Shown here one piece after another: positions 1 to 61,021 of a stretch of 64,000 nucleotides of DNA. How positions within the stretch are numbered: the stretch's first letter is position 1; the number at the start of each line of letters is the position of its first letter. This DNA comes from Ranitomeya imitator (taxonomy: Eukaryota). A program made the position numbers and the translations under genes. The notes under the pieces were generated by a model. That model was not told where the DNA came from, searched no databases, and saw only the letters and a list, made by a program, of their open reading frames with translations. The stretch is taken from positions 18,042,001 to 18,106,000 of the forward strand of contig NC_091288.1 of assembly GCF_032444005.1 (NCBI RefSeq). Direction: 5' to 3'.

Positions 1-248
1 ATGTCAAGAACTTGAGTCTTAAGGACTTCTGGGTAGTCCCCATTGATAAGAATTGGATGGGCAAACCACCCGATCATGAACTGGAGATATCGCTCAGCAG
101 CGCTCACGTCATCTGGATTATTGGGATTTTTTGGTTCTGCCCAGTCTGAATTCAGAGAGATTCCCACCTGACCTTTCTGCGACGCTCGGTACTTGTCATT
201 GTACACATGCCAGGCCTTAGCGTGAGCTTTCACAATGTTATGTGACAC
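1..248 (-). CDS. lct: lct-A exon 7 (partial), domain II
   Basis: Acceptor ttatag|GTGTCACAT; [21 protein letters not shown]...[17 protein letters not shown]. Confidence 0.95.
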
Positions 249-16043: not shown

Positions 16044-16595
16044 TATGTATATGTATAACCATTGTGTATATAGTGTATTGTCTAGTGTGTCCTTAAGGTT
16101 ATTAAACATATAATTTAACCTTTGGCTGCTCCTTTATCTCAATCCACACGTCCGTGTTCTCAGCTTTAACTTTCCATGCTATCGGGGCTGGTTTCTGGCC
16201 CAATATAATCCTGTTAACAGACCGCGATTATATCTAATGAGGAACTGGTGGCAGTCCTACCGGGCTAGCAGTGCTCTGTTTCACTGGTGCTAATGGAATG
16301 GGCCTCTCAACCTGTCAGGGTTGTGAGTGTGGTGCCACATAAGCAGTTGCTTGGGCGACCCTCACTCACTCCCCGTGCCTCCCTAGGCCCATTTGGCTAG
16401 GGAGTAAAACTGTGCCAAGCTGATCTTATGTGTCCCTAAGGGGTGTTTAACATCACGTTGGTGCAAGTGAGGAAACTGTACCGTGTGATGCTTTTGACGG
16501 AAAAGTGATGTCAGGCGGGGTGGCAAGGTGCAGATTCTTCACGTGGTGGTAGCGGTGGCATTCTACGTGATGTCTCCGGTGCCATCCCTCACAGA

Positions 16596-18554: not shown

Positions 18555-18659
18555 ATGATTTCAGGTAACCAACTGTAGATCCATGATATTATTTCTCAAT
18601 GTCCTCACGGCTTATGTCTGGCAATCCCCATACACTTCACACATAAAATTAGATAAGTT

Positions 18660-21900: not shown

Positions 21901-24900
21901 AGGAGCAGTATTATAGTTGGTATATTATTGTCCATAGGGGGCAGTATTATAGTAGTTATATTCTTGTACATAGGAGCAGTATTATAGTTGGTATATTATT
22001 GTACATAGAGGGCAGTATTATAGTAGGTATATTCTTGTACATAGGGGCAGTATTATAGTAGTTATATTCTTGTACATAGGGGCAGTATTATAGTAGTTAT
22101 ATTCTTGTACATAGGGGCAGTATTATAGTAGTTATATTCTTGTACATAGGGGCAGTATTATAGTAGGTATATTCTTGTACATAGGGGCAGTATTATAGCA
22201 GTTATATTCTTGTACATAGGGGGCAGTATTATAGTAGTTATATTCTTGTACATAGGAGCAGTATTATAGTAGTTATATTCTTGTACATCGGGGCAGTATT
22301 ATAGTAGTTATATTCTTGTACATAGCGGCAGTATTATAGTTGGTATATTATTATACATAGCGGCAGTATTATAGTTGGTATATTATTGTACATAGGGGGC
22401 AGTATTATGGTAGTTATATTCTTGTACATAGGAGCAGTATTATAGTTGGTATATTATTGTCCATAGGGGGCAGTATTATAGTAGTTATATTCTTGTACAT
22501 AGGAGCAGTATTATAGTTGGTATATTATTGTACATAGAGGGCAGTATTATAGTAGGTATATTCTTGTACATAGGGGCAGTATTATAGTAGTTATATTCTT
22601 GTACATAGGGGCAGTATTATAGTAGTTATATTCTTGTACATAGGAGCAGTATTATAGTAGTTATATTCTTGTACATAGGAGCAGTATTATAGTAGTTATA
22701 TTCTTGTACATGGGGCAGTATTATAGTAGTTATATTCTTGTACATAGGAGCAGTATTATAGTTGGTATATTCTTGTATATAGTATATACTTATATTATGG
22801 CGTATAAGAGTATGTTAATGGTCTGTAAGATGTCAGTGCCTTTGCTATAAATATGTCTCCTTCTATATAAAGTGCTTTTGCATTCTTAATCTATTCCAGA
22901 TATTAGGGTTGGCTGAATGACTTGCACATATTCTGCTTGCATTGTATGTAATCTCGTACCTTTCAGCGCCTCATTCACATAATGCTTATAATAATACGTT
23001 CTCCATTCGTCATTTAGATTCGTCCCGCGCTCGGATATTCCATTTTCTGTGATATATATGGCAGGGTTGTTGAACTCTTCTTTTATCCAGTGTAATAACC
23101 TTCTCAAGCCAAAAGGCGTCACTTTCAGCCAAGCACTACCAGATGTCAGCCAGGTTCTGTCACTCAGTAAATAAACCCCCCTGGAATGATGGACAGAAAA
23201 TACATCAAATTTCCTGTTGATTTTCTTTAGGACCGGATTACATTTTCGCTGTCACCTTTACCTGTCTCCTTCATAAGTCTGATAGTCTATTCCAAAGATC
23301 GCGTGCCCAACCAGCACGGTAGTATAGTGGTTCAGGCCAAAGAAGTCGTATGTCCCTTTTATTCTTTGCTTCTCACTTTCAGTGAATTCTGGGAGCCTGA
23401 TGATGAAAGTCATAGAAACCATGAGTAGCAATAGCAAGAGAGGAAAACCTACCGTTATGTAGTCAGGCATCTCACTTGAGTTTTTTTTTCCTTCAATCAG
23501 ACAATTTGCATAATTCGCATATTTCCCAGAGGAGCATTGCGGCTTTAAGTCTCCTCATCTCGGCATGCTTAGCATGTCAATCTCCACAAGGAGAAATTAT
23601 ACTTCTTGGAGATCAGTCGGACGGCTCTCACTCAGCCAAACCAGATCTCCACTTTGCACTGACGAGGGGCAGTTCCCACGAAACACAGTGTCTGCAAATT
23701 GAGATTCTGGTTTGGCTATTATCCTAAGTCATGTGACAAGGCTCGTTAATGGGTTGACATTGACTTGCAGGATCGCTACCTTCCAATAGGTGGCACTAGA
23801 GTTCTAGTCCTCTTCCTCTCTGAAGAGACAATTTTCCTAATTAATAATTAGCATATTTCCCAGAGGAGCATTGCGGCTTTGTCTCCTCATCTCGGCATGC
23901 TTAGCATGGCAATCTCCGCAAGGAGAAATGATACTTCTTGGATATTCCTTCACTCAAAAATGTTGAAAATAGTTCTATATGTCCTGATCATTTCCCGCCA
24001 AGACTACTGGAACTTCCTCCTTTATAGCCTCCCCTGTAAGGCTATGTTCGCACCTGTGTCAGAGGGGCCTCGATCATTTTTACAGCACATGCAGCTCCAT
24101 TTACCTTCAAATAAACGTGCAATGCTCCCAATCTTCCCTTTTGTAAGTAAATGGTATCTGCATATAAATGGGATCCATAACGGAGATGTGAACAGAGCCT
24201 AACACAGTCTTGCATCTCCAAATCATCTTCGATTATGCTGGTATTGCTAGACGTGAAGGGACTGTTACACCTCTCCGGTCTAACAGTCCCTTCATGTACT
24301 ACACGTGACGATGCAGGCGGAACATGGCTTTATAAATGAGCTGGGCACAGGGACTGAAGTCCACAGGATCTATCCCTCCGTCCTCGTCACACTCGGATCA
24401 GCGTGACTGACAGAACTGCATTTATACGCAAATATGAAGAACCCAACAAACTCCTCTACGTGTGCTCTGACTCTTTACTCCGTGGCTCCATGATTTTTGA
24501 AGCTTTGATCTCCCTGAAATACTCAAAGTATCTCAGTTTCATGCTTTACATTGTCCTGGCAGCATGAATGGGACGACAGGTTTTTATTTTTAAAAAGCAT
24601 GGTAGACATGCCATTGGCTTTACTGAGTCTTCCAGAAGTTGAAAACATCCATCCGAAAGACATGATGAAATAAGCATTACTACATGGATGATGCAGGCTG
24701 TTCTGTCATTGTCAGCATACGCACCGGCTTTGGGACTGTCCTATAGCGAGGCTCCTTTCTCGAATTCTGGTCTTCATAACATCTGGGTAGTCCCCAGTTT
24801 TAAATATAGGATATCCAAACCAGCCACCGAAAAACTGAAAGTCGTTAATACATGATTGTTACAATATGTCACTATCATACTATGCACAAGAATATAACTA

Positions 24901-27900
24901 TTATAATAATGCCCCTATGTACAAAAATATAACTACTATAATACTGCTCCTATGTACAAGAATATAACTACAATAATACTGCCCCTATGTGCAAGAATAT
25001 AACTATTATAATACTGCCCCTATGTAAAAGAATATAACTACAATACTGCCCCTATGTACAAGAATATAACTACTATAATACTGCCCCTATGTGCAAGAAT
25101 ATAACTATTATAATACTGCCCCTATGTACAAGAATATAACTACTATAATACTGCTCCTATGTACAAGAATATAACTACTATAATACTGCCCCCTATGTAC
25201 AAGAATATAACTACTATAATACCGCCCCTATGTACAAGAATATAACTACTATAATACCGCCCCTATGTACAAGAATATAACTACTATAATACCGCCCCTA
25301 TGTACAAGAATATAACTACCATAATACTGCCCCCTATGTACAAGAATATAACTACTATAATACTGCCCCTATGTAAAAGAATATAACTACTATAATACTG
25401 CCCCTATGTACAAGAATATAACTACTATAATACTGCCCCTATGTACAAGAATATAACTACTATAATACTGCTCCTATGTACAAGAATATAACTACTATAA
25501 TACTGCCCCTATGTACAAGAATATAACTACTATAATACTGCCCCTATGTACAAGAATATAACTACTATAATACTGCTCCTATGTACAAGAATATAACTAC
25601 TATAATACTGCCCCTATGTACAAGAATATAACTACTATAATACTGACCCTATGTACAAGAATATAACTACTATAATACTGCCCCTATGTACAAGAATATA
25701 ACTACCATAATACTGCCCCCTATGTACAAGAATATAAGTACTATAATACTGCCCCTATGTACAGGAATATAACTACTATAATACTGCCCCTATGTACAAG
25801 AATATAACTACTATAATACTGCCCCTATGTACAAGAATATAACTACTATAATACTGCCCCTATGTACAAGAATATAACTACTATAATACTGCCCCTATGT
25901 ACAAGAATATAACTACTATAATACTGCCCCTATGTACATGAACATAACTACTATAATACTGCCCCCTATGAACAAGAATATAACTACTAAAATACTGCCC
26001 CCTATGTACAAGAATATAAGTACTATAATACTGCCCTTATGTACAAGAATATAACTACTATAATACTGGCCCTATGTACAAGAATATAACTACTATAATA
26101 CTGGCCCTATGTACAAGAATATAACTACTATAATACTGCCCCTATGTACAAGAATATAACTACTACTGCCCCTTATGTACAAGATTGTAACTACTATAAA
26201 TCATTGAGATCCCATTTGTTCACTGAGGTTTTTGTGGTCAAAGTCGAGATGTTGTAGATCATAACAGCATGAATTAAATATTATGACCGCCCCACTCCAA
26301 AAATACTGAGATAGCCACTTTAGAACAATATTCTACAAGAACCCTGTAAATAGATTTTCCGTACCATCATGTACCGCCCTGCTGCATCGATGTCCTCTTG
26401 CTTATAAGGGTTGATCGGTTCTGCCCAATCAGAGTTGAGGGTGATGGAGATAAGACCCTCTTGGGAGGCTCGGTATTTATCGTTATACAGGTGCCATACT
26501 TCGGCATGGGCTTTAATTAGGTTATGTCCTGCCAAATACACACCAATCCCGGGTGATCTGACTCCTTTAAGGAAAGAAAAAACAGAGCATTACAATCTGC
26601 AACGAAGATATAACTGCCTGGAGTCCATGAAAACAGTCCATACCTCCTATAGACGGGTAGGGTATGGGAGAGGTATGTAAGGTTGGACCCCAGTGCAGCG
26701 CCAGAACTTATCCAATGGCTACAACGTATAATCACCTGGTGCAAAGGCGCCTTCTCCGTAACCCAGGTTGGCAATGATGTATGGCTCGTTCAGAGTGATC
26801 CAGAACTTCACTTTGTCTCCCAATCTTTGGAAGAGAACTTCAGAGTAGTCCTTAAACCTTTCTACTATTGTCTCGTTCACCCAACCACCATCGTTCTGCA
26901 AAGCTTGAGGTAGATCCCAGTGATAAATAGTGACCTGAACAGACGAGAGCAAGGAAATAACTAAAAAAAAAAAGAAGAGAGAAATTGCAACTCATCGGAC
27001 TGGTGGTGCTATATAAAGGTGATTTATTACCTGTGGTGTAATGCCGGCAGTAAGTAAACCATCTATCAGGCGAGAATAGTGACTGAGGCCGGCTTCGTTG
27101 ACGTGGTCTTTAGTCCCATCTGGGAGAATTCTCGGCCATGAGATTGAGAATCGATAATATGAGACCCCAAGACCCTTGATAAGTTCTATGTCTTCGTCAA
27201 CCCGGTAGTAGCTGTTGCACGCCACGTCTCCATTACTATCATCTTCGATTTTAGATGATGTGTGAGAAAACTGATCCCAGATGCTGAGCCCTTTCCCATC
27301 AGCCCTCCAAGCCCCTTCGATCTAGAAGGAAAGGAAAAATAATGGGGGTTTATTGTTTTTTTTTCTGTATTATAATATTCTTGCTGAAAGTCCTACAAAA
27401 TGGTGGATATGTACAATATATCTATTTTTTTTTTTAGTTTGTGGGAATTGGTGTGAAAGGTGACAACTGCACTCGTAGAGAGTGTTTAAGAGCAAAGAAG
27501 AACCTCCAGAGATTGAAAAATCTATCTTTCAACCCGGATGGTTGGGACATTTATTTTACAAGAAGAAGAAGAAGTATCCAACCACTACCTGGGTTGTATT
27601 CTGGAACAACACCTATCTTTCTTTACTAGAATCAATAAGTGACTATGGTAGCCAATCACTTGCCAAAGTGTTGGCGTCACTATGGAGAGGACATCATTGA
27701 TCAGCTGTGATGGTCCCATGTCAGTTCCAGAGGGGGGACCATGAAACAACTGGTTGAGAAATTAAGGGGCCCATATGATGTAGGTAGGTATCTCTGCTGA
27801 CTCCCTGATACACGTGCACACTCAGCTGAGCATGCATATGTTTTCATTCAGGAGAGTAAGCGCCTACCTAAATATCGGGTGCTGTAATTAAACATTTTCA

Positions 27901-30900
27901 ATCCTTCTCCCATGTGTTGGGAAAGAGTCAGGAGATCTCAATACACATTTGAAGGTGGTCCTGCCTGACCAAAATCAGCAGTTTAGACAACATTAATCTA
28001 ATTGGGGTCTTTTAGGGGGATTTGAAAAGTAAATATATGGCAATTATTTTTAGGTAGATGCAGCTTTATATTGGGGTTTTCCATCATATTTCACATCTGA
28101 CTGTAAAACTTGGGTAAAATGAAGATTTCTCCAACCTGAAAAGCTGAGGAGGCAACGCCCCAAGCGAAATCATCCCGAAATTCTCCGTATAGAAATTCTT
28201 CTTCCTTGTACATGGGGATACCATGGTTGCTGATGACCTCGGCGTAGTAAATCGCGGTACGTTTTGCAGTTCTTGGTCGCATAGGATTATTGAAATCTAC
28301 ATGGTGAAGGCCAAACCGTATTCGGTATCCATTAACCCACTCAAAGGCGTCCATGAGTGAGTACATAGAATAACCCTTCAGATTCACTCCGTCCACACTG
28401 AGAGCTTTTGGGGGTTAGAATGGAGTCATTAATTATAGTTGCATCCTCATTTTAGAAAGAAAATCTACTTAACAATATATATGGTTAGAAAAACATGTCT
28501 CCTACCTCCGTGCTGGTTTTGGAAAAACCATTAACTTTATACCCATTGATATTGTCTTAGTCATTACGTTATAACCAAATTTAGTAAACTATAACTAAAT
28601 CAGTTTATTTAGCTCCAAGAAAATGCGACTAACCTTTCAGGGCTTCATCAATATACGTCTTATGATAGAAAATTCGGGCAGTGTCATCAAAATCGGGATA
28701 CTGTCCATTGCGATTCCATTTTCAGTGATGTATATGGGGACATCTCCGTACTCTTCTTTTACCCAGTTAAGCAACCTCCTCAAGCCCCAGGCTACTGCCC
28801 TGAGATTTTCAGCAGCAGTTTCTGGCCAGTTATCGTTAAACTCATCTTGGATGTCAATATCATTTTGGAAAGATGGAGGAACGAGGGTTAGAGTTTTATG
28901 TTGAACTATTTTTGTAGTGTAGATGTTTATGGAAAACACATCGGCTGATCCTTGGATATAGGTCTTCTCCTCATCTGTAAAAGCTGGAAGCCTGGACTTT
29001 TGGAGACCCTGTAACTCACTCTTGTTGTCCACTTGCCATTTCATTACCTCTGGGTAGTCACCATTTTTGAAAATAGGGTGTGCAAACCACCCCAAGGTGA
29101 ACTGCAGGTAGCGATCAGCAGCTTCTATGTCCCTTGGTTGTGTGTGGTCTTTAGGTTCCACCCAATTAGTGTTGAGGGTCACAGAAATGACGCCTCCTTG
29201 ACTTTTCCGATATTGCTCATCATAGGTATGGTAGACTCTGGCATGGACCTTAATTAGATTGTGAGCCACTCTGTGTGGAGCATAACCAGGATCATCTTTC
29301 ACCCCAGGTGGATAGAGACCAATGCCATAACCAGCAACAGCAATTGTGTGAGGTTGGTTAAAAGTCATCCAGAACTTGACTCTATCTCCGAAAGTTCTAA
29401 AACAAAAGTCCGCGTAGCTGTGAAAAGCATCTAGCACTCTATCATCTTCCCAACCACCCAAGTCTTGGAGAGCCTGAGGAAGATCAAAGTGGTAAAGGGT
29501 CACCATGGGTGAGATGTTGCTTGCCAGTAGGCCATCAATAAGCCTATTATAATACTCAACTCCCTGATTATTGACTGTGCCCTGTCCAGTTGGGAAGATT
29601 CGAGACCACGAGATTGAAAAACGGTAACTATTTACCCCTAGACCTCTCAGCATGTACAAGTCTGCATCCAGCTGATGGTAACTATCACAGGCCATGTCCC
29701 CATTGCTATTTTCATAAATATTTCCTGGAATATGTGAAAATGTGTCCCATATACTTGATCCTTTTCCATCCTCGTTCCACCCTCCCTCAATCTGATATGC
29801 TGAGGTTGAGGCTCCCCAGTTAAAATCACTTGGGACTATAGAATAATGATACATGTCCCTTTCGAAAGCAGATTGTCCCGAGAACTTATCCCAAACAACT
29901 TTAGCATTAGAGGGAACTTCTGAAGCTGGTAGAGCTGGTAATTTTTTTGCATGTATCGATCTTGCACGAGGAACCTCTTTAACCATCTTCATCCTTGGGA
30001 AACCATTATTTTCTACAATGCTGGAAATGAGGTAGGCGGATTGTTTGGGGGTCCTTTGTCTGTTTGCATTTTCGAATTCGACGTGATGTAAACCAAATCT
30101 TTGACTGTACCCTTCTGGTCCCTCGAAGCCGTCCAGGAGGGAACGGACTATATAGGCGCTTAGAGTCACAGTATCATTTATGACAGCTGTAAAGAAATAA
30201 GGGTTTACAGGGTCAAAATAGCCAACCACCCTAGAAAAATACGACATAAATCAAATTTACAGTGAGCTAGTTATGTTCTAAAGTCTCTGAGATATAAGAT
30301 CTATTGTCAGTGACCGCTCAGCTATGGATGTGAGTAGACTTACCTTTCAGGGCTTCATTGATGTAAGCCGTCAGGTACTCAACCCGAGCTGTGTCATTGA
30401 ACACCTCTCCGGTGTATGGCGTTGGCATACCATTTCCAGTTATGTATATGGGTAGTCCTCCCTTTCTATATTCTTCTTTGACGAAGTTCAGAAGCCTTCT
30501 GAGACCCCATGGCACCACATAGAGCCATGGAGATTCGGTGGTCGGCCATGATGGATCCACGTGTGAAGCAAATCCTCCAATATTTTCATAATTAGCATCA
30601 CAACTTTGGCTTTTGGAGACATTGACCAACCGGGAAGTATAGTGGGAGATGCCAAGGAAGTCTGCAGTGCCTTTGATGTAGGCCTTCTCCTCCTCAGTAA
30701 ATGTGGGCAGTGCTGCCACTGTGGAGGGACACTGGTTATTTATGTCAAGAACTTGAGTCTTAAGGACTTCTGGGTAGTCCCCATTGATAAGAATTGGATG
30801 GGCAAACCACCCGATCATGAACTGGAGATATCGCTCAGCAGCGCTCACGTCATCTGGATTATTGGGATTTTTTGGTTCTGCCCAGTCTGAATTCAGAGAG

Positions 30901-33900
30901 ATTCCCACCTGACCTTTCTGCGACGCCCGGTACTTGTCATTGTACACATGCCAGGCCTTAGCGTGAGCTTTCACAATGTTATGTGACACCTATAAGATAT
31001 AACATAGAAGACTGTGTTAGAGAAATACCTATCTATTCTCATAACCTCCATGGTGTGAGAACAGTCTGCAAGGATCTAATTATTATTGTGAATCTGCAGT
31101 TTTCGTATATTATTCTGCACGATCATAGTAACCTGAAGAGATAGCGAGACGCCGTACATTAGCCAAATATAAATATTTCCATTGTGACTTTACTGGTTGT
31201 ATATAACTAATGTTTTATAGGGCACATTATTTTCCAGTTACATGAAGTGATTGTCCATAATAACAATAAGGTCTGGTTTCTTTAGTTTGGAAACAATGTC
31301 CCTTTTGTCTTTTAGTGTATCTTAAAGTTTACCTCTCATGCTGTAAATGCATAGGAGTCCAGTGGGCGGTGCTATTCAGTGACCGACAGCCAACTTTGTA
31401 TATAAGCACTTATAAAAAAAGGCTATAAATAATGGAGTGAAACCGCCCACTGGATTCCTATTCCCACACAATGAGCAGAAGCTCCTATTGTATATTATAT
31501 ATTACATATTGTATTATATTATTAACGTCAAGCACTGATACCTATTCAATATTTTGATTATAGCTTTTTTTTTTATTTATTTATTACTTCCCGTACATTA
31601 TTACATTATTACTGTGCCAGCCATCTTGCCTGGTTACTGGTCTAAGAAAATGGCTGTATAAAATTATATATATATATGTATATATCTTTTTTACAAATGT
31701 CTAAATTTTTCTCATTGCCGTAATCATACTGATCTAAAGAATCAGGTTAGTTTTTAGTGTACAATGAGTGTTGTAAAAACAAAATCCAAAAAATATTGGA
31801 ATTGCATTTTTTTCACTGCACCTTGATTTTTTCCCCACTCTGCTCGTGATGATAATGAGACTTCTGAAAATTGATCTCTACAGAACAGGAAAGGTTTTTT
31901 TTACCATATACTTACTTTGATGAAAAAACTTTAACAGAAAAAAAAAATTAAGCACCACATAGATTAGAAAATATATTTTCTTTAAAGAATTTCATTTTTA
32001 TGCAAATTATTGAAATAATTTATAGTTTCTGTTTGTACCTTGAAGGAGGCATTTCCTGGATCTCTGATCCCAGGTGCATGTTCTCCGGTGCCGTAACCAG
32101 CGTAACTAACGACCCAAGGTTCATGGAACGTTATCCAATGTTGAACTCTATCTCCAAAATTCTTGAAGCAGAAATCTGCATATTCCATAAATGCCTCGAT
32201 GGTGGAGTCATCCTGCCAGCCTCCGGACTCCTGCAGAGCTTGGGGTAGATCCCAGTGATATAAAGTTACTATCGGTATAATATTTTCTTTGATTAACCTG
32301 TCGATTAATTTGTTGTAATATTTCACGCCGGCGGAATTGACTTTGGATTTCAGTCCCGTTGGGAATATTCTGGACCAGGAGATGGAGAAGTGATAGACCT
32401 TAGACTGTAGACCCTTCAGAAGATACAGGTCATAGTCAATCTTATTGTAGCTATCACAGGCCACATTGGCGGTGGCATTGTTATCAGCTTGGCCATTTTG
32501 TCCAAAAACATCCCATATGGATTGTCCTTTATCCCCTGCGGTCCAGCCCCCTTCTACTTTGAAGGCTGAAGATGAAGAGCCCATGAGGAAACCTTCAGGG
32601 AATGTATCGTGTAGGAAGGCGTCTCTCTCTGCTGGAGTCTGGGCGGCAAATTTATTCCATACTGTGGTGAATACTGAACGGGATGATGAAGACTTGTCTG
32701 CTACAGTTTCAGATCTGTGTTATAGAATAAATTATGTGAATTAACGCCAAGATCTTATATATAGTTTATATGGTATATAAACCTTAGAACATTTTCTACA
32801 ATTCTGCCTTTTTCTTGGATGGTCTACAGTTAGATCGTTCATGCATGAGACTCTCCAGAAACATGTCCCATTTTCAGAAGCATTACAACGGAGGAGATCT
32901 GACCCCTGCCATGAAAATCAAGGTAACAGGATGAGATTGAATGCAATGGCTTATATTGTTGTTTAATATTGAGATTTGATGTAACTTTGTGGGTTCAATG
33001 TTCTTGGTAGGTTCAATACGAAACCATAAGATGAGGCCATGATAAAAGGATAGGTGGGATAAGTGGATTCTATAGGTCAGTGCAAATACATCTTAGCTAA
33101 GTTGATGGGTTTCCACCATTCCTTCTTTTTTATTGCTTTTTATGTTTTTCAAGGATTTTTTTATGTTTTTTTTCTGCGATTTGCACACAGTCAGTACTGA
33201 TGATATAGGGGTTGAAGCGAGCAAACTAAAGACTTATTGGCAAGTGTCTCATCAGTGGTGGGGTGCCAAGTGCGTAAAATGGTCCAAAATTACACGATCC
33301 TGAGTAGTCATGAGAATTGGTAAGGAGTTACCAATGCCTATATGGGGGGTCAGCTGGGTCTACAGAGCTGGTAAATCTGACACTAAAGGTGGGTGACCAG
33401 GAAAGATAGACCCAAGTGAAGAATAGCCGGACCGCCCAGGTTTGGTGGTGAGGTTTTGTGCCCAAGTGTGTGAGATTCACGGGTCAATTAAATAGCTGCT
33501 AACGTCACCATTTTTTTTTTGCCAGGTTGGATCGTTGTGTGTACATTGGTTTTCAGTCTTAAAGGGGGTTAATATCTATATTAAAAAAAAGATCTCCTAT
33601 AAGCAGAGCAGAGAGTTGTTATAAAGAGCCAGATCGGAAGGTGGCACCTTAGGTAGAGATAAGGATGAGAGCAAACGAGAAGAAGGAGGCGCTTTTTCTT
33701 GCACATTTCACCTTGGCACTGGCTCACCTTCCTGTCCCAGCAGATGATGTCGGTAATATATAACTTATGTCATATCCCATGAGGCTGGAAACAGAAGCAC
33801 TGATTTCTATAGAGAAACAGAAGATTAAAAGATCATTTTATGTGATCATAATTCAAAACTATATAAAAAGTTGAGTAACTGTTTCTGTTATTTCAGGTTC

Positions 33901-36900
33901 CTTCCTTCTTGTACTGTACTGTACACCAGAGGTGTCAAACTGCATTCCTCGAGGGCCGCAAACAGGTCATGTTTTCAGAATTTCCTTGTATCGCACAAGG
34001 TGCTGGAATCATTCTGTGCAGGTGATTAAATTATCACCTGTGCAATACAAGGAAATCCTGAAAACATGACCTGTTTGCGGCCCTCGAGGAATGCAGTTTG
34101 ACACCTCTGCTGTGCACACAATAGTCATTCCTTCAATGGCCGCCATCTTACCTGAATATACATGGAAGGTGAGAACAAATTTATCTTCCTCTGATACAAT
34201 ATTACAGTCAGCCAATGAAAATCTGAAGATGAGAATCTCCACAGTCTTCTCGTAGTGCTGCAAAACAATACATGGGAGAATAACCAAAATCTTATTGTCA
34301 CCCTCTTGGGATGACCATTATGTTTTGTCATAATGAGACTAATCTGTATTCATCTATATTTTCCCAACAGATCATTTTTTTTTGCTCTTTTTCACAAAAC
34401 TTTAGATCAGACTTGTTTCTAGCTGTAAGGCAACTAGTTGAAGCTGGAGCCCTCCCCGCTTATCTATGGATCCTAGAGATGAGCAAATTGATTGGCAGGA
34501 TCATGGGTTCAGTAGCCTCATCCGTAGTCCATGCCTGCCGCATGCGAGCCGTAAAAACATTCTCCCACCTGTAAGAATCCCCGATTCCACTTCTGATTTG
34601 TTGACCTGACATGACTTCATCATCGTGGTATGACACACATGACGTGGAATGCCAGCTCGATCTGCAATAAACTCCATGAGATCCATCACCTCTTTAACTC
34701 TCATAATTTTTCCTTCCTGGGCCTCACCAAAACATGGCTCACACCCTCCGACACAGCCTCCCCTGCTGCGCTAGGTTACGTCAGCCTCCACTTCACCCAC
34801 ATTCCCCACCCTGGCAACAGACATGGTAGAGGAGTGGACCTTCTCCATTCTACCAACTGCACCTTTAACCCAATCCCACCTCTACCCTCCCTTATCCTCC
34901 CCTCTTTTGAAGTCCACTCTGTTCGCATCTACTTCTCCTACTACCTCCAAATGGCTGTTGTATACCGACCTCCAGGCCCGACCACTGTCTTTATTGACCA
35001 GTTGTCCACATGACTTCTTCACTTTCTCTCTGCAAACATTCCCATCATCATCATGGGTGACTTCAATATCCCCATTGACACCTGCCAGTCAGCAGCCTCC
35101 AAACTCCTTGTGCAGCCATGTACTACGGAGGACAGAGAATGAACTTCAATCCAATATTGCAGCCAGCATGCAGCCAGCGGGTAAGGAAAGGGTGAATCAA
35201 ACACCCGAAAACCCCGCCTCCATGGCTGAAGATTGTTCCCTCCAAATTCAGGTGACAGAGTCCCTTTAACTCTGCTGCCCGACTAATTAATCTCTCTCCT
35301 CGCTACACTCCTGCTTCCCCCCTTTACAAATCCCTTCACTGGCTCCCAATTTCCCAGCTTAGGCTTCTTTCACACTAGCGTCGGAATCTCCCCGTCGCAA
35401 TGCGTCGGGGAGAGATTCCGACGCTAGCGTTTGCTGCATTGCACAATGGAGGCAGCGGATGCATTTTTCCGGCGTATCTGCTGCCCCATTGTAAGGTGCG
35501 GGGAGGTGGGGGCGGAGTTCCGGCCGCGCATGCGCGGTCGGAAAAAGCGGTCTGTCGGGAGAAAAAAAACGTTACATGTAGGGTTTTTTTCTCCCGACGG
35601 TCCGCCAAAGCACGACGCATTCGTCGCAAGACGGATGCGAAGTGTGCAAATCCGTCGCAAATGCGTCGTCAATAGAAGTGTATGGGGAAAAAACCGCATC
35701 CTGCAAGCACTTTTGCAGGATGCGTTTTTTCTGCAAAACGACGCATTGTGACGGATTTAAAAAACCGCTAGTGTGAAAGTAGCCTTATCCAGTTCAAACT
35801 ACTAATACTGACCTACAAAACCATCCATAACCTTTCTCCTCCATATATCTCCAAACAAATCTTCACATATCTCTCCTCACGTAATCTCTGGTCCTCCCAA
35901 GACCTCCTTCTCTCCTCCAAACTGACTTGCTCTTCATCCAATCGCCTCCAAGACTTCTCCCTAATATCACCCATCCTCTGGAATTCTTTGCCCCAACACG
36001 TCCGGTTATCCACTACTTTTGGATCCTTCAGATGGAATCTGAAAACCCATCTCTTCAAAAAAAGCTTACAGCCTGTAAAGACCACACGGCCACCTCTACA
36101 CCATCGGAGCTACTGCAACCCCCCACCATCTTGTAGAATGTAAGCCCGCAAGGGCAGGGTCCTCGCCCCTCTGCATCAGTCTGTCATTGTTAGTTTGTCT
36201 ATTGTAAGTGATATTTGTATTTTGATGTAACCCCGTCTCATGTACAGCACCATGGAATTAATGGTGCTAAATAAATAATAATAATAATAATAATAATATT
36301 GCCAGGCCTACTAATCAAAAGAGATGTCAGGGATTCCTGCAGGAGAAGGCGGGCAGGGCCCCAGTCCTGCAACCACGGACTAATGACAAGGCCATTGGAC
36401 CACGGTACCTATGCAAATTAATTTGCAGTTTTTTAATGAATTTGCCGAGAAATTTTGTGATTGCAGTCTGACCAGAAATTGGTGTGATAATACGGTTGTG
36501 TGAATTGGCCATGAGGGGGATTCACCAGCTCATCTGAGAGATCGTCAGTATTTCTGCACGTACACTTATTATCATTAATAACATGAACTCTGGACTGTGA
36601 GGCCGAAGGACGACATACGGCTATCAAGCCTGTAAATAATGGATTCATCGCAGGAGACCAGAAATCTTAGTAAACATGTCCTCCTATCATCATCATGGGG
36701 GAAGTGAACTTTAATCAGCAAACAGAAAGGATCGTAAATCTGAGAAAGCAAATGGCCTCTTAAAGGGACTGCCTTTGATAAAGGGGCAGAAGTGTGACAA
36801 TTAAAATATGTGAATTACCCCTGGTCACCAAGTACAATATCACTGGGGTCTCATTGCCCATAGCAACCAATCACAGTGCAGCTTTCATTTCTACAATGCT

Positions 36901-39842
36901 GTTGAAGAAGTGAAAGCAGAGTTCTGATTGGTTGCTATAGGCAACAGGGCCAGTTTTAATAAATGAGGCCTAGTACCTTCGCTTCTCCTCTGACCTTATC
37001 TGTTGTCCAGTTCGGCATTTCCTGGGAATTCTTACAATCATGTCGTAAATTCAGGGCAAGGAAATCAATAGATTTCTGGAAAAAAAAAAGTAGAATGTAA
37101 TTTGTATGGAATAACAGTGACAGTGTGAACATCTATAGGCAGCCATAGGTGGCTCAGAGGGCCCGGGTACCGGAGGGCCTGTAGTCCTCTCTACCACATA
37201 TGGCGATATCAGTATTGATGGCACTTGGTAGATGGGGCTCGTTTACAGATTTTGCATTAAGGACTTTGGCTTCTTCATGAAAGCTAGAAATGTATTTCAC
37301 AGTTGACTGGACAATCTGCCAAACCAGACCGCAAAAGGGATGAGGTTTACAAAAATTGTGGCCAAAAGGGGCAATTTTGGTGGCGTTCTTAGAGGCAGAA
37401 CACTCAAATGCCTAAAATGTGGTGTTGTAAATGTTAGTATGATATTTACCAGGAAGTTCCCTCGAAGTGATAGACAGGTGTCCAGGAGCGGCGAGGGTAA
37501 AGCAATGGCTATCCGTCCACCTGACAACACAAATGCATGAAGACCGGCGGTGTCATTATTATTATTATTATTAGTAGTTTATAATCATAGGTGACAGCTG
37601 CAAATGTGTTTGATGAGAGTACTGAGTTAGGCTACTTTCACACTAGCGTCTTTTGCAATACGTCGCAATGCGTCGTTTATGGGAAAAAAACGCATCCTGC
37701 AAAGTTGTTTGCAGGATGCGTTTTTGCCCCATAGATTAACATTAGCGACGCATTGACACACGTCGCAACCGTCGTGCGACGGTTGCGCCATGTTGTGGCG
37801 GACCGCCGGGAGCAAAAAACGTTACATGTAACTGCCGACGGACCGCTTTTTCTGACCGCGCATGTGCAGACGGAACTCCGCCCTCACCTCCTCGCACCTT
37901 ACAATGGGGCAGCGGATGTGCAGGAAAAATGCATCCGCTGCCTCCTTTGTGCGGCGCATTCACTGCTAGCTTCGAAACCTCGGCCCGACGCAGTGCGTCG
38001 GGCCGAGTCCGACGCTAGTGTGAAAGTAGCCTTAACCCATACTAGCCAAATGCTAAAGTCCCTTTATGTAAGTTGTGGTCCCTTGTTATGGCCCCTGATG
38101 TCTCGCAGATACACGTCCCTTATAAACTGAGGAGAAAAGTATGGGGCCGCAAGTGTTATATTGAAATAACTCCTTTAGTTTCATTATCCCCGATGTATAA
38201 CCTCCAAAAACGTCGCCCCCGGTGTATAACATCCGGCCCCCGCCGTGCCGTCAGCCTTTACTAACATGTGAGAGTGGTGCAGAGCTCACTGATACCTGCG
38301 TGGCCTTGTTAGAGGAGCCACCGGGGCAACAAGTCCATCCATGGCATTTCTTCCTACTAAATCCCCCCCATCACCTGTGATATTATTGAGAAGTGGAAGG
38401 AACCACAGCAACTCAGCCACAAAATTGAGACCCCGTAACCTTACCGGGTGGCCGAGGGCTAAGGAGCAGAAAGCAGGAAAGTCACCACCGCTCTACTGAC
38501 CCCATAACTTCAGAGTCCAGACTTCCTGTGGTATTAAAGGGACACTGTCACCTGAATTTGGAGGGAACAATCTTCAGCCATGGAGGCGGGGTTTTTGGGT
38601 GTTTGATTCACCCTTTCCTTACCCGCTGGCTGCAATATTGGATTGAAGTTCATTCTCTGTCCTCCGTAGTACATGCCTGCACAAGACAATCTTGCCTTGC
38701 ACAGGCGTGTACTATGGAGGACAGAGAATGAACTTCAATCCAATATTGCAGCCAGCGGGTAAGGAACGGGTGAATCAAACACCCAAAAACCCCGCCTCCA
38801 TGGCTGAAGATTGTTCCCTCCAAATTCAGGTGACAGTGTCCCTTTAACATCACTACAAAAACTGCGCCCCCTCCGGGAGCTTCAAGTCCGTGCAGCTGCA
38901 TGCAGCCGTACATCACCAAGCACAATGCAGAGCGTTGCATGGAGCGGTGTAAAGCCGCCACCACTGGACTCTGGAGGAGACGTGTTCTGTGCAGTGATGG
39001 ATCGCACTTCTCTATCTGATGGAGGAGTCTGGGTTTGGTGATTCCAGGAGGACGTTACCCCCTGAGTGCATTGTGCCCCCTGTACAGATGGTGGAGGATA
39101 ATGCTATGGGCTTATCAGGGGGTGGCATCTGTCCCTGAGTTTGAGTGAAGGGAAATCTTAATTCTTCAGCACAAGGCATTGTGGACAATTGTAGCTTCAG
39201 CTTTGTGGGAACAGTTTGGGGAGACCCTTATCTGCCCCCCATGAGTGCGCTCGGTGCACAAGCTCCTTACAGACATGGTAGAAGGTTGGTGACACAACAT
39301 GACCGGCCGCAGTTATTCCATTCATCATAACACTTACCGCCGGCAGAATACTTCTGGTGATAGATATTGTACACCCTCTCATGGGCGTTCAGCAGAATCT
39401 TTAGGTATTGCAAGTCTTTTACAACTGTGCGGACATCAAATGTTATCCAGGTGCCGACCAAATCTCCGAATGAACGAAATGCAAATTCCGCATATTCTGC
39501 ATAGGCTTCATCAGGGCTGGAGCCACCTGCAGAAAGACGACTGATGTTGCCATCATGTAAGATCACAATTGGTCTAATGTTGGCGCCATTCAGTTCCCGG
39601 AGAAGAGTCTTGTAACACTGCAGCTGCCCGTCCTCCATGTCCAGCGGCACCTTGTAATGGGTGACACTGTACTGCTGTAGAGTCTGGATCTGATCTCTTA
39701 TATTATTAAGAGCCTCACTATTGCACCCATGACTCCATAAGGGTCCAGCGATGACCATGAAGTCCTTCTCTGTGGGCTTGGAGATGCCATAACATAGTGA
39801 GGGGATGAAGAGAAGGAGGACCCCTCTCCACACAGCTCCCAT
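18715..39842 (-). CDS. lct: Lactase-phlorizin hydrolase paralog B (proximal to mcm6), 17 exons, about 1869 aa if the -1 frameshift near 28699 is corrected; possible pseudogene
   Basis: Exons 39842-39338, 37520-37450, 37075-36995, 34257-34152, 33806-33728, 32714-32039, 30989-30344, 30186-28634, 28404-28136, 27321-27031, 26934-26736, 26564-26365, 24834-24725, 23396-23262, 23180-22960, 19359-19123, 18944-18715. Sum is 5609 nt, one short of a multiple of 3. Four GH1 repeats plus a C-terminal TM helix; exon number and phases follow mammalian LCT. Confidence 0.93.
19123..19359 (-). CDS. lct: lct-B exon 16
   Basis: [32 protein letters not shown]...CNGFPDP; donor GAAG|gtgagt. Confidence 0.95.
19511..21325 (-). 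mobile_element. Full-length, inactivated Tc1-like transposon
   Basis: Perfect 35-bp TIRs cagttagggccagaaatatttggacagtgacacaa; TA TSD; transposase ATG at 20966 with a frameshift near 20835 and an in-frame stop at 20380; [22 protein letters not shown]. Confidence 0.92.
19786..19944 (-). mobile_element. 5'-truncated CR1-type LINE 3' end inserted in the Tc1
   Basis: Ends in a (taactatgttac)n-type tail; 5-bp duplication aaatc at 19781-19785 and 19945-19949; interrupts the transposase KGFATKY end. Confidence 0.7.
22960..23180 (-). CDS. lct: lct-B exon 15 (domain IV nucleophile ITENG)
   Basis: [31 protein letters not shown]...NEALK; 221 nt. Confidence 0.95.
23262..23396 (-). CDS. lct: lct-B exon 14
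   Basis: [26 protein letters not shown]; 135 nt. Confidence 0.95.
23517..23942. repeat. About 92-bp direct repeat pair (23517-23610, 23851-23942), possibly a split-direct-repeat remnant of a DIRS/Ngaro retroelement
   Basis: gcatatttcccagaggagcattgcggcttt...atacttcttgga present twice; class assignment is inference. Confidence 0.45.
24725..24834 (-). CDS. lct: lct-B exon 13
   Basis: tttcag|TTTTTC; [28 protein letters not shown]; donor CG|gtgcgt; 110 nt. Confidence 0.93.
24871..26198. repeat. 35-bp minisatellite array in lct-B intron 12, inverted relative to the other two arrays
   Basis: Unit TATGTACAAGAATATAACTACTATAATACTGCCCC. Confidence 0.96.
26365..26564 (-). CDS. lct: lct-B exon 12
   Basis: [20 protein letters not shown]...SDWAEP; 200 nt. 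Confidence 0.95.
26736..26934 (-). CDS. lct: lct-B exon 11 (domain IV acid/base TLNEP)
   Basis: [13 protein letters not shown]...[10 protein letters not shown]; 199 nt. Confidence 0.95.
27031..27321 (-). CDS. lct: lct-B exon 10
   Basis: [16 protein letters not shown]...[14 protein letters not shown]; 291 nt. Confidence 0.95.
28136..28404 (-). CDS. lct: lct-B exon 9
   Basis: [23 protein letters not shown]...WGVASSAFQ; 269 nt. Confidence 0.95.
28634..30186 (-). CDS. lct: lct-B exon 8 (domain III), with 1-nt deletion near 28699
   Basis: ttacag|CTGTCATA ... CTGAAAG|gttagt; 1553 nt where phase 1->1 requires a multiple of 3; conserved [18 protein letters not shown] continues in a shifted frame. 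Confidence 0.93.
30344..30989 (-). CDS. lct: lct-B exon 7 (domain II C-half)
   Basis: [13 protein letters not shown]...PIYITGNG...NEALK; 646 nt. Confidence 0.95.
32039..32714 (-). CDS. lct: lct-B exon 6
   Basis: acacag|ATCTGAAAC ... TTCAAG|gtacaa; 676 nt, phase 2->0. Confidence 0.93.
33728..33806 (-). CDS. lct: lct-B exon 5
   Basis: ctatag|AAATC ... GGAAG|gtgagc; 79 nt; LMGYDISY. Confidence 0.85.
33927..34109. mobile_element. hAT-type palindromic MITE
   Basis: cagaggtgtcaaac...gtttgacacctctg; 8-bp TSD ctgtacac/ctgtgcac. Confidence 0.75.
34152..34257 (-). CDS. lct: lct-B exon 4
   Basis: ttgcag|CACTAC ... TTCAG|gtaaga; 106 nt; [13 protein letters not shown]. Confidence 0.85.
34575..36300 (+). 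mobile_element. Internally deleted L2/CR1-clade LINE with nested MITEs
   Basis: APE endonuclease remnant ([23 protein letters not shown]) at 34630-35080; 3' region ending in (AAT)n at 36300; interrupted by a half T2-MITE (about 35113-35268) and a Harbinger MITE. Confidence 0.75.
35362..35784. mobile_element. PIF/Harbinger-like MITE
   Basis: TIR ggcttctttcacactagcg / cgctagtgtgaaagtagcc; TTA TSD on both sides. Confidence 0.8.
36995..37075 (-). CDS. lct: lct-B exon 3
   Basis: ttccag|AAATCT ... GATAAG|gtcaga; 81 nt; [14 protein letters not shown]. An in-frame alternative donor is possible at 36977. Confidence 0.85.
37450..37520 (-). CDS. lct: lct-B exon 2
   Basis: tgtcag|GTGGAC ... TTCCTG|gtaaat; 71 nt; GRIAIAL. 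Confidence 0.8.
37630..38031. mobile_element. PIF/Harbinger-like MITE (same family as 35362, opposite orientation)
   Basis: TIR ggctactttcacactagcgtc; TTA TSD on both sides. Confidence 0.8.
38538..38843. mobile_element. T2/Kolobok-type fold-back MITE
   Basis: TTAA-agggacactgtcacc...ggtgacagtgtccct-TTAA; about 140-bp near-perfect inverted arms. Confidence 0.8.
39338..39842 (-). CDS. lct: lct-B exon 1
   Basis: [19 protein letters not shown] signal peptide; donor GGCG|gtaagt; 505 nt. Confidence 0.92.
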
Positions 39843-43452: not shown

Positions 43453-59295
<15,843 letters not shown>

Positions 59296-59354
59296 CGTCC
59301 TCTCGGTTCTTTCCGACCGGAGAAGCCGCTTCCTGCTCGCTGGGAGGACAACGC

Positions 59355-59450
59355 TGGAGTTTCGCGCCAATCTCCGGCACCACGTGACCGGTTTCGCGCC
59401 AGTCGCAGCCAATAGCGGCAGAGGGATGGTGCAAGTTTTCGCGCCATTGA
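59355..59450 (-). promoter_or_regulatory. mcm6 CpG-island promoter with three E2F sites, E-box and CCAAT box
   Basis: TTTCGCGCC at 59360-59368, 59392-59400 and 59437-59445; CACGTG at 59381-59386; CCAAT at 59409-59413; 65-150 nt upstream of the ATG. MCM genes are established E2F targets. Confidence 0.8.
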
Positions 59451-60627: not shown

Positions 60628-61021
60628 CTGTTTAGGGTCCTCAGGATGACATCTCCTGCAGTATTTCTATGCGCTGAGCAGAGAGCTGGAAGCTGTAGAA
60701 GTTCAGCATGAGAAAGAACAGCTGGACCTGATATCATTTTCCATAGATATGGGAACAGAACCGAGCTTGCTGCGTACCAGTGATGAGCGAGTGCACTCGG
60801 ATAACTAGTTATCCCACCATGCTCATGTCTTCGGCATGCTCAAAAAATACGTTTGCGTCCCCATGGCTGCAGGTCTTGCAGCTGGTAAACAGCTATAACG
60901 CATGCAGGGATTGCCTAACAGACTCAAACATATTTTTCAAGCATGTCAAAAATACTCCGTTAGCACACGAACATGCTCAGATAACACTTTATCCGAGCAT
61001 GTTCGCTCATCACTACTTACA

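What the first reader, a model, noticed from the sequence alone, without database searches (positions are those of the whole stretch)
30742..32685. Patchwork homogenisation of two old lactase paralogs: domain II exons nearly identical, domain I exons highly diverged
Seen: lct-B exon 6 (32039-32685) vs lct-A exon 6 (572-1218) differs at about 14 of 647 nt (about 97.8%). The visible part of exon 7 (30742-30989 vs 1-248) differs at 1 of 248 nt, so synonymous sites are homogenised too. In contrast exon 3 shares 11/27 aa, exon 4 9/35 aa, exon 5 9/26 aa, and exon 1 has multi-codon indels. The identity breakpoint lies inside exon 6, about 20-30 nt from its 5' end. Intron 6 differs in length (323 vs 1049 bp) and shares only about 165 bp at about 90% next to exon 7. 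Inference: recurrent interlocus gene conversion, or an unequal-crossover chimera, keeps the body of the protein in concerted evolution while the N-terminal pro-region diverges. The exon-biased pattern also leaves cDNA-mediated conversion open.
Basis: partly seen in the sequence, partly recalled or inferred. Interest (0 to 1): 0.75.

Follow-up and report, generated by a model that had tools for sequence, protein, structure and literature searches.

The report
Partial gene conversion between tandem lactase paralogs
Two neighbouring lactase-like genes in this vertebrate (probably a frog) are very different in their first five exons but almost identical in exons 6 and 7. One gene copied a stretch of DNA onto the other, which is a real but ordinary case of gene conversion.

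Summary
Two minus-strand lactase-phlorizin-hydrolase-like (GH1) genes lie in tandem downstream of an MCM gene.

**Identity pattern between the copies**
- Exon 6 differs at 14 of 647 nt (dS 0.045).
- The visible part of exon 7 differs at 1 of 248 nt.
- Exons 2-5 are 41-61% identical in nucleotides. Their dS is 0.6 for exon 2 and from 1.2 to saturated for exons 3-5.
- Exon 1 is 72% identical, with in-frame indels.
- Introns other than the end of intron 6 do not align.

**Not an assembly artefact.** A spliced RNA contig from an independent run matches copy A with zero differences across exons 7-6-5-4-3-2. This places the identity breakpoint 20 nt inside exon 6.

**Intron 6.** Identity collapses at the start of intron 6. 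The middle shares nothing (about 136 bp in A against about 880 bp in B). Identity returns about 165 nt before exon 7.
- This excludes a simple unequal-crossover chimera.
- It argues against a purely cDNA-templated event.
- It fits at least two DNA-level interlocus conversion tracts.

**Age.** Neutral divergence in the tract (4.3%) is about the same as divergence from a sister species (5.6%). "Recurrent" or ongoing homogenisation is therefore not shown.

**"Body of the protein."** This claim is unseen, because copy A leaves the window. The converted domain II lacks the catalytic nucleophile in copy B.

This is a known phenomenon in a new gene pair. The scan had already noted the tandem array on this same window.

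The parts
1..248 (-). lct-A exon 7, visible part (the exon runs off the window start). High-identity tract 2, coding part.
   Evidence: 1 difference in 248 nt against 30742-30989. The splice junction 248|572 is seen in spliced contigs of X3 and X6. The B counterpart gives a GH1 Pfam hit.
249..571 (-). lct-A intron 6 (323 nt, GT..AG). The last ~165 nt (249-~413) belong to tract 2. Positions ~436-571 have no counterpart in B.
   Evidence: RNA joint that skips 323 nt. Alignments. Sister-species contig on 327-598 at 7% divergence.
572..1238 (-). lct-A exon 6 (667 nt; GH1 domain II, N-terminal half). Positions 572-1218 are high-identity tract 1. Positions 1219-1238 are the diverged 5' 20 nt.
   Evidence: RNA joints 1238|1613 and 248|572. 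14/647 differences. Pfam PF00232 E=3e-83.
1613..1691 (-). lct-A exon 5 (79 nt), diverged from B
   Evidence: Spliced contigs X3 and X6 with 0 differences. 41% nucleotide and 8/25 amino-acid identity to B.
3461..3566 (-). lct-A exon 4 (106 nt), diverged
   Evidence: 9/35 aa, dS 1.2.
4891..4971 (-). lct-A exon 3 (81 nt), diverged
   Evidence: 11/27 aa, pS 0.80.
5562..5632 (-). lct-A exon 2 (71 nt), diverged
   Evidence: 12/23 aa, dS 0.62.
10433..11018 (-). lct-A exon 1 coding part (signal peptide plus degenerate GH1 domain I), long form
   Evidence: ATG to GT donor. Pfam GH1 E=2e-10. The long form is shared with outgroup P0121.
30742..30989 (-). lct-B exon 7, the part comparable with A. The open frame continues down to about 30321.
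   Evidence: Pfam GH1 positions 193-392. 'ITGNG' stands at the nucleophile motif.
30990..32038 (-). lct-B intron 6 (1049 nt). Only 30990-~31160 is homologous to A. The middle (31186-32014) is B-specific and holds a 20-nt inverted-repeat pair at 31351-31461.
32039..32714 (-). lct-B exon 6 (676 nt). Positions 32039-32685 are tract 1. Positions 32686-32714 are the diverged 5' 29 nt, of the type seen in the outgroup frogs.
   Evidence: acceptor position shared with L001 and L002. Pfam E=2.7e-83. No RNA evidence was laid on B itself.
33728..33806 (-). lct-B exon 5 (79 nt, AG/GT, same phase as A)
34152..34257 (-). lct-B exon 4 (106 nt)
36995..37075 (-). lct-B exon 3 (81 nt)
37450..37520 (-). lct-B exon 2 (71 nt)
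39338..39842 (-). lct-B exon 1 coding part, short form (in-frame deletions relative to A and the outgroup)
22889..30250 (-). lct-B GH1 domains III and IV (several exons). These are context, not part of the comparison.
   Evidence: tblastn and Pfam.
44166..59400 (-). MCM-family gene upstream of lct-B, in the position MCM6 occupies next to LCT in mammals
   Evidence: Pfam MCM and MCM_OB hits on three ORF pieces. Its identity as MCM6, as opposed to another MCM paralog, is inferred from synteny only.

Best explanation
Two lactase-phlorizin-hydrolase-like genes arose by an old tandem duplication and have since diverged almost to saturation. More recently, DNA-level interlocus (non-allelic) gene conversion copied sequence from one copy onto the other in at least two tracts.

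- Tract 1 runs from about 20 nt inside exon 6 to the exon 6/intron 6 junction, at least 647 nt.
- Tract 2 starts about 165 nt before the end of intron 6 and runs through exon 7 for at least 413 nt. Its far end is outside the window.
- The non-homologous middle of intron 6 separates the two tracts, presumably because a heteroduplex cannot form there.

The event or events date to about the time this species split from a sister species (about 4-6% neutral divergence). Since then both copies have accumulated their own substitutions under moderate purifying selection (dN/dS about 0.36).

Shown: the mosaic itself, its boundaries, the reality and transcription of copy A, and the age ratio.

Inferred: the mechanism (homologous-recombination repair using the paralog as template), the number of events, and the direction.
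For: - **Tandem, same-strand GH1 genes.**
- **Identity step.** 15/895 mismatches in the tract against 294/825 in the other exons, p about 1e-86.
- **dS.** 0.045 for exon 6 and 0.019 for exon 7, against 0.79 for exon 1 and 1.45 pooled for exons 2-5. Synonymous sites are homogenised, so selection alone cannot explain the pattern.
- **Intron sequence next to exon 7.** It shares the same ~5% divergence as the synonymous sites.
- **Intron 6 start and middle.** The first 24 nt have 7 mismatches (against exon 6 synonymous 6/139, p=6e-4) and the middle has no homology.
- **Independent RNA data.** Contig X6 record 14 lies on 1-246, 570-1238, 1613-1691, 3461-3566, 4891-4970 and 5561-5634 with 0 differences. 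X3 contigs break exactly at 1218, as expected if both A and B transcripts are present in that run.
- **DNA support for copy B.** DNA contig X1 record 2 carries B-type letters and continues on both sides into sequence unlike copy A, presumably B's own flanks.
- **Sister species.** Its contigs carry A-specific intron 6 and intron 5 at 5.6-7% divergence, so the duplication and A's short intron predate that split.
- **Outgroup frogs.** Genomic exon 6 from L001 and L002 is equidistant from A and B (76.0-76.7% nt), which makes A and B each other's closest relatives in the tract.
- **Polarisation.** The 14 differences are spread over both lineages.
Against: - The far (3') end of tract 2 is unseen, because copy A leaves the window at position 1.
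- All read evidence comes from de Bruijn contigs, which collapse near-identical paralogs. Copy-specific letters in genomic DNA of copy A could not be confirmed independently of RNA.
- No orthologous B sequence from the sister species was retrieved as a sequence, so the classical per-exon tree test is incomplete.
- Trans-specific differences at 186, 263 and 267 suggest that, since the species split, the tract has evolved by ortholog and not in concert.
- The number of events (two tracts, or one discontinuous tract) is inferred.
Confidence: 0.8

Rival explanations
1. A single unequal crossover or segmental replacement made copy A a chimera: its own old 5' part joined to a B-derived 3' part from exon 6 onward. 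Later insertions and deletions remodelled intron 6.
For: There is one sharp 5' breakpoint, at 1218. All neutral sites of the block fit one age. What lies beyond exon 7 in copy A is unseen and could be uniformly B-like.
Against: The first 24 nt of intron 6 already have 7 mismatches, and A's ~112-nt middle has no counterpart anywhere in B's intron. Insertions into B would leave A's sequence flanking them, and it is absent. The sister species already carries A's short intron 6 at 7% divergence, so that intron form is at least as old as the tract.
Confidence: 0.08
2. RNA- or cDNA-templated conversion: a spliced transcript of one copy served as the repair template, so exons were homogenised and the intron was skipped.
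For: The high identity of exon 6 ends within a few nucleotides of the exon/intron junction (last exon difference at 605, first intron mismatch at 568). The intron middle is not shared. Copy A is transcribed, and X3 contigs break as if both copies are.
Against: Tract 2 includes about 165 nt of intron 6 at the same ~5% divergence as the synonymous sites, including a 100%-identical run of about 66 nt. A cDNA cannot supply this. A second, DNA-level event would still be needed, so the model saves nothing.
Confidence: 0.07
3. Assembly or polishing artefact: reads of one paralog were used to correct the other, or a block was duplicated in silico.
For: In DNA contigs of X1 only B-type letters were listed across exon 6 and exon 7. 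One letter (1030 C) seen in X1 and in the sister species is present in neither assembled copy.
Against: The spliced RNA contig of X6 reproduces the assembled copy A exactly, including all 15 A-type letters, joined to A-specific exons 5-2. X1 holds A-specific intron 6 and intron 5 contigs. The two introns 6 differ in length and content. Contig assemblers pop such bubbles, so a missing A-type DNA contig is expected.
Confidence: 0.03
4. No homogenisation at all: extreme purifying selection keeps exons 6-7 identical.
For: Domain II is the best conserved part across vertebrates.
Against: dS is 0.02-0.045 in the tract, against 1.3-1.8 to other frogs for the same exon. Adjacent intron sequence is also ~95% identical.
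Confidence: 0.01

Closest known systems
Interlocus (non-allelic) gene conversion between tandem paralogs, for example the primate gamma-globin pair, red/green opsin genes, RHD/RHCE, and CYP21A2/CYP21A1P (from my own knowledge, not tested here)
   Same: - Same-orientation neighbours.
- A sharply bounded block of near-identity that includes synonymous and some intronic sites.
- The block sits in otherwise old, diverged sequence.
- Tract ends fall where homology is lost.
   Different: - The gene family (a four-domain GH1 lactase-like gene in a non-mammal) has not been reported for this, as far as three literature searches show.
- There is no evidence here for repeated or ongoing exchange.
Mammalian LCT (lactase-phlorizin hydrolase) locus next to MCM6
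   Same: - Repeated GH1 domains.
- A degenerate domain I in exons 1-5.
- Domain II beginning in exon 6.
- An MCM-family gene immediately upstream on the same strand.
   Different: - Two tandem copies here, against a single gene in mammals (my own knowledge).
- Copy B has in-frame deletions in exon 1.
- The C-terminal anchor and the catalytic residues were not examined in this report.
Retro- or cDNA-mediated gene conversion
   Same: Identity drops at the exon 6 donor site, and the intron middle is excluded.
   Different: Intron sequence next to exon 7 is part of the tract, and the 5' breakpoint lies inside an exon. The defining exon-only pattern is not met.

Membership tests
Interlocus gene conversion between paralogs | Two paralogous loci available as donor and acceptor (here in cis, same orientation) | tested here: met
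   Both genes lie on the minus strand about 29 kb apart, with matching exon lengths and phases for exons 2-5.
Interlocus gene conversion between paralogs | A bounded tract whose divergence is far below that of the flanking homologous sequence, at silent sites as well | tested here: met
   dS is 0.045 and 0.019 in the tract, against 0.47 to saturated elsewhere. Mismatch counts are 15/895 against 294/825, p about 1e-86.
Interlocus gene conversion between paralogs | Phylogenetic incongruence: the tract groups by species while the flanks group by ortholog | tested here: inconclusive
   Distant frogs L001 and L002 are equidistant from A and B in exon 6. The sister species holds orthologous A-specific introns. 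No separate A and B tract sequences could be obtained from the sister species. Shared differences at 186, 263 and 267 suggest the event is not younger than that split.
Interlocus gene conversion between paralogs | Both copies are real in independent data | tested here: met
   Spliced RNA contig identical to copy A across the breakpoint. DNA contig with B-type letters that continues beyond the tract into sequence unlike copy A.
Concerted evolution (recurrent, ongoing homogenisation) | Several conversion events of different ages, or species-specific shared substitutions in both copies | tested here: inconclusive
   - Exon 6, exon 7 and the intron piece fit one age.
- One candidate site (294) is T in both copies here and C in both contigs of the sister species.
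- A possible older stratum exists in exon 1 (3' half) and exon 2.
- These are hints only.
cDNA-templated conversion | Tract limits coincide with exon limits and introns are excluded | tested here: not met
   About 165 nt of intron 6 lie inside tract 2. The 5' limit is 20 nt inside exon 6.
Unequal-crossover chimeric gene | Uninterrupted donor-like sequence, introns included, from the breakpoint onward | tested here: not met
   The start and middle of intron 6 are not homologous. A's intron form is shared with the sister species.
Lactase-phlorizin hydrolase (LCT) genes | Tandemly repeated GH1 domains in one polypeptide | tested here: met
   For copy B, Pfam PF00232 hits on exon 1 (weak), exons 6-7, 28640-30250 with 28094-28414, and 26995-27321 with 22889-23251. 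For copy A only domains I and II lie in the window.
Lactase-phlorizin hydrolase (LCT) genes | Conserved position downstream of MCM6 | tested here: met
   MCM P-loop and OB-domain ORF pieces at 45627-56608 on the same strand, upstream of lct-B. The paralog assignment to MCM6 rests on synteny.
Lactase-phlorizin hydrolase (LCT) genes | C-terminal membrane anchor and catalytic Glu pairs in domains III and IV | not tested
   Outside this finding. Another note of the scan (s1-288382) concerns domain III.

The most novel reading that the evidence does not exclude
The locus may be under repeated, still-segregating exchange and not a single old event. Four hints point this way:

1. A letter at 1030 (B 32497) is A-like in the assembled copy B, but differs in a B-type DNA contig of the same species and in the sister species.
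2. Site 294 is shared by both copies within each species but differs between species.
3. An RNA contig (X3) is a mosaic of A and B letters.
4. There is an intermediate-age stratum (dS about 0.5) in the 3' half of exon 1 and in exon 2.

Together these could mean multi-epoch, polymorphic micro-conversions. They would keep the non-catalytic chaperone-like domain II matched between two co-expressed lactase-like proteins.
Probability: 0.12. Interest if true: 0.5.

Novelty: new member of a known kind. Interest (0 to 1): 0.27.

Why it matters
The result documents, with transcript support, that a non-mammalian vertebrate carries two expressed tandem lactase-like genes, and that part of their pro-region (domain II) was homogenised long after the duplication.

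- **For annotation.** Short reads and de Bruijn assemblies collapse exons 6-7 of the two genes. Per-gene expression and variant calls there are unreliable.
- **For trees.** Gene trees built from different exons will disagree.
- **For biology.** It is one more example of a common process. It does not open a new question unless the conversion turns out to be recurrent and selected.

Tried and rejected
- **Neighbouring-window notes.** A look-up of the scan's notes for the stretch holding the rest of copy A failed, because coordinates must lie within the window. A word search gave only notes on this same window.
- **Word search with exon 6.** It found no protein above 80% identity, so no close-species orthologs could be fetched as sequences. 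The two 78-80% hits (L001; L002/L003) served as outgroups only.
- **A-type versus B-type outgroups.** My first impression that L002 was A-like at the 5' end of exon 6 was rejected after alignment. Both outgroups carry the B-like form.
- **Word search with exon 1 of A.** It gave a single hit, which is too few for a tree.
- **Residual homology or a mobile element in the B-specific middle of intron 6.** I found no homology to A and no other copy in the window, only a 20-nt inverted-repeat pair.
- **Three literature searches.** Nothing was found on lactase gene conversion or lactase duplicates in amphibians.
- **Big profile search (search of protein representatives).** Not used, as the operators advised, because the identity of the protein was not in doubt.
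- **Joined spliced protein model.** None was searched anywhere. All searches were exon by exon, by reference.
- **Sister-species tract sequences.** Separating A and B tract sequences from the read-laying table was attempted and abandoned as unreliable, because contigs merge near-identical paralogs.


Full report
**What is there**

All the genes discussed lie on the minus strand.
- ORF pieces with MCM P-loop and MCM OB domains lie at about 45.6-56.6 kb.
- Downstream comes a complete-looking lactase-phlorizin-hydrolase-like gene, lct-B. GH1 (PF00232) hits fall on exon 1 (weak), exons 6-7 (domain II), 28640-30250 with 28094-28414 (domain III), and 26995-27321 with 22889-23251 (domain IV).
- Further downstream is the 5' part of a second copy, lct-A. 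Its exon 7 runs off the window at position 1.
- The layout, an MCM gene upstream of LCT on the same strand, matches the mammalian MCM6-LCT arrangement. That comparison is from my own knowledge.

**Check of the observation**

Self-BLAST gives two blocks. 548-1218 matches 32015-32685 at 96.9% over 671 nt without gaps. 1-435 matches 30742-31185 at 94.1%. Base-by-base comparison gives the following.
- The exon 6 tract has exactly 14 differences in 647 nt, at A coordinates 605, 671, 704, 745, 755, 810, 874, 959, 1001, 1007, 1152, 1153, 1177 and 1206.
- The visible 248 nt of exon 7 have one difference, at 186.
- Intron 6 is 323 nt in A and 1049 nt in B.
- Amino-acid identity is 11/27 in exon 3, 9/35 in exon 4 and 8/25 full codons in exon 5.
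- Exon 1 has in-frame indels of 42, 36, 9 and 12 nt.

**Exon structure and reality of copy A**

All the public runs I laid on 1-5700 were Logan contigs. Two of them, from two different studies, contain spliced contigs.
- X6 record 14 (2940 nt) lies on 1-246, 570-1238, 1613-1691, 3461-3566, 4891-4970 and 5561-5634 with zero differences.
- All skipped parts have CT..AC ends on the plus strand, which is GT..AG on the gene strand.
- After the stated cut shifts, and after checking splice sites in the sequence, the exons of copy A are: exon 7 up to 248, exon 6 572-1238, exon 5 1613-1691, exon 4 3461-3566, exon 3 4891-4971, exon 2 5562-5632.

Three conclusions follow.
- Copy A is transcribed.
- The short, poorly conserved exons 2-5 are real exons.
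- The exact A-type haplotype of exons 6-7 is physically joined to A-specific exons in data independent of the assembly. This removes the collapse or mis-polishing explanation for copy A.

In run X3 one contig ends exactly at 1218 and another starts at 1189. That is the expected graph branch if B transcripts, which diverge at 1218, are present too.

For copy B there was no direct RNA evidence.
- Exons 2-5 were placed by AG/GT sites giving the same lengths and phases as in A.
- The exon 6 acceptor (32714) coincides with the acceptor in two outgroup frog contigs.

**Divergence strata**

Nei-Gojobori estimates, computed exon by exon:

| Region | dS (A vs B) | Note |
|---|---|---|
| Exon 1, whole | 0.79 | |
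| Exon 1, first half | 1.50 | |
| Exon 1, second half | 0.47 | |
| Exon 2 | 0.62 | |
| Exon 3 | saturated | |
| Exon 4 | 1.2 | |
| Exon 5 | saturated | |
| Exon 6 tract | 0.045 | dN 0.016 |
| Exon 7, visible | 0.019 | |

For scale, the same exon 6 differs from two other frogs by dS 1.3-1.8. The baseline divergence of the paralogs is therefore about as deep as the divergence from those frogs. The block is 20-30 times younger. The step is significant beyond any doubt: 15/895 against 294/825 mismatches, p about 1e-86.

**Boundaries**

- The 5' boundary is abrupt, at A 1218-1221 / B 32685. That is 20 nt (A) or 29 nt (B) after the exon 6 acceptor.
- At the 3' end of exon 6, identity collapses at the donor site. 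The first 24 intron nucleotides have 7 mismatches, against 6/139 at exon 6 synonymous sites (p=6e-4).
- The intron middle shares nothing even in a short-word search.
- Identity returns about 165 nt before exon 7, at about 5% mismatches plus two small indels and with a perfect run of about 66 nt.

The homogenised sequence is therefore not strictly exonic, and it is not continuous.

**Age**

Pooling exon 6-7 synonymous sites with the ~157 aligned intron sites gives 15/348 = 4.3% (CI 2.4-7.0%).

Contigs of a second organism label (X8) lie on A-specific intron 6, on intron 5 and on other A introns. They show 179 differences in 3201 nt, which is 5.6%. The two figures do not differ (p=0.38).

The exon 7 value is compatible with the exon 6 rate (P=0.31). 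At positions 186, 263 and 267 the sister species shows two contig forms, one with the A letter and one with the B letter. These A/B differences therefore predate the species split.

Outgroup polarisation puts about 6-7 of the 14 exon 6 differences on the A lineage and about 4-5 on the B lineage.

Taken together, the block was homogenised about as long ago as that speciation and has diverged normally since. The data do not demonstrate recurrent or ongoing homogenisation.

**Mechanism**

DNA-level interlocus gene conversion with at least two tracts (or one discontinuous tract) explains all the features.

- **Single unequal crossover.** This is contradicted by the non-homologous start and middle of intron 6. 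It is also contradicted by the sister species already carrying A's short intron 6 at 7% divergence.
- **cDNA template.** This would explain the sharp drop at the exon 6 donor but not the intronic part of tract 2. It remains a minor possibility for tract 1 alone.
- **Selection alone.** This is excluded by the silent-site identity.

**Function of the converted part**

- Exons 6-7 encode GH1 domain II (profile positions 2-392).
- In both copies the acid/base motif reads HEP, a state invariant in all aligned vertebrate relatives.
- In copy B the nucleophile motif reads ITGNG where active GH1 domains have TENG.
- The converted domain is therefore very probably non-catalytic.
- In mammals domains I and II form the cleaved pro-fragment (my own knowledge).

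**Limits**

- Copy A beyond exon 7 is outside the window.
- All read evidence is from contigs, which merge near-identical paralogs. In DNA run X1 only B-type letters were listed in the tract.
- One letter (1030 C) occurs in X1 and in the sister species but in neither assembled copy.
- No separate A and B tract sequences from a close relative could be obtained, so the per-exon tree test is incomplete.
- Organism names are coded in the tools. I did not verify the taxon.
All searches were by single-exon references.

**Verdict**

This is a real, well-bounded partial gene conversion between two old tandem lactase-like paralogs. It is a new example of a textbook process. The scan had already noted the tandem array on this same window (s1-288380).

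Noticed in passing
window 10433-10760 and 5562-5632 vs 39338-39650 and 37450-37520: A possible third, intermediate divergence stratum. The 3' half of exon 1 (dS 0.47) and exon 2 (dS 0.62) are much less diverged than the 5' half of exon 1 (1.50) and exons 3-5 (1.2 to saturated). Fisher p is 0.005 and 3e-5. A 24-nt stretch at the exon 2 acceptor is 96% identical. This could be an older conversion, or simply uneven constraint.
   Followed up: partly
window 1030 (= 32497 in copy B): A B-type DNA contig of the same species (X1) and the sister species (X8) both read C. Both assembled copies and the RNA contigs read T. The change would turn Asn into Asp. The cause could be heterozygosity in copy B, a very recent micro-conversion, or a polishing error.
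   Followed up: partly
window 39338-39842 vs 10433-11018 and L004:242-847: Copy B's exon 1 lacks 14 and 12 codons that copy A shares, wholly or in part, with an outgroup frog (P0121). The indels are therefore deletions in B. B is also the more diverged copy from the outgroup (47% against 52% amino-acid identity).
   Followed up: partly
window 30345-30420 (lct-B exon 7) and 640-660 / 32107-32127: Domain II reads ITGNG at the GH1 nucleophile motif (seen in copy B only) and HEP at the acid/base motif (seen in both copies). It is very probably catalytically dead, like the Klotho pseudo-glycosidase domains.
   Followed up: partly
window 6474-10305, 21326-22782, 24880-26199 (inverted), 19386-19508: Large arrays of one satellite family (register shifts of about 35 and 70 nt, 90-94% between copies). 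They sit in intron 1 of lct-A and in two introns of lct-B, one of them in opposite orientation.
   Followed up: no
window 52634-52835 and 55504-55705, with ORF 53726-54637: Two 202-nt arms are 100% identical and in inverted orientation. They flank a Tc1/mariner-type transposase ORF (HTH_Tnp_Tc3_2 plus DDE_3) inside the MCM gene region. This looks like a very recent DNA-transposon insertion. Further transposase ORF pieces lie at 13123-14010 (+) and 19864-20904 (-).
   Followed up: partly
window 16456-18575: A CT-rich tandem repeat with long open frames in several phases lies between lct-A and lct-B (GC 0.51, AT skew -0.41). It is probably a minisatellite and not a gene.
   Followed up: no
window 59806-60625, 61016-61760, 62254-64000: Three further tandem-repeat arrays (register shifts of about 58, 31-62 and 70-74 nt) lie in GC-rich sequence near or upstream of the 5' end of the MCM gene.
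   Followed up: no
window 31351-31461: A 20-nt inverted-repeat pair, 95% complementary and 71 nt apart, lies in the B-specific middle of intron 6. It may be a small MITE-like insertion.
   Followed up: no
window 1711-2090, 2281-2850, 3231-3420, 4371-4560: Stretches in introns 3 and 4 of lct-A attract contig depths of thousands to over 100,000, in both species. They are high-copy interspersed repeats.
   Followed up: no
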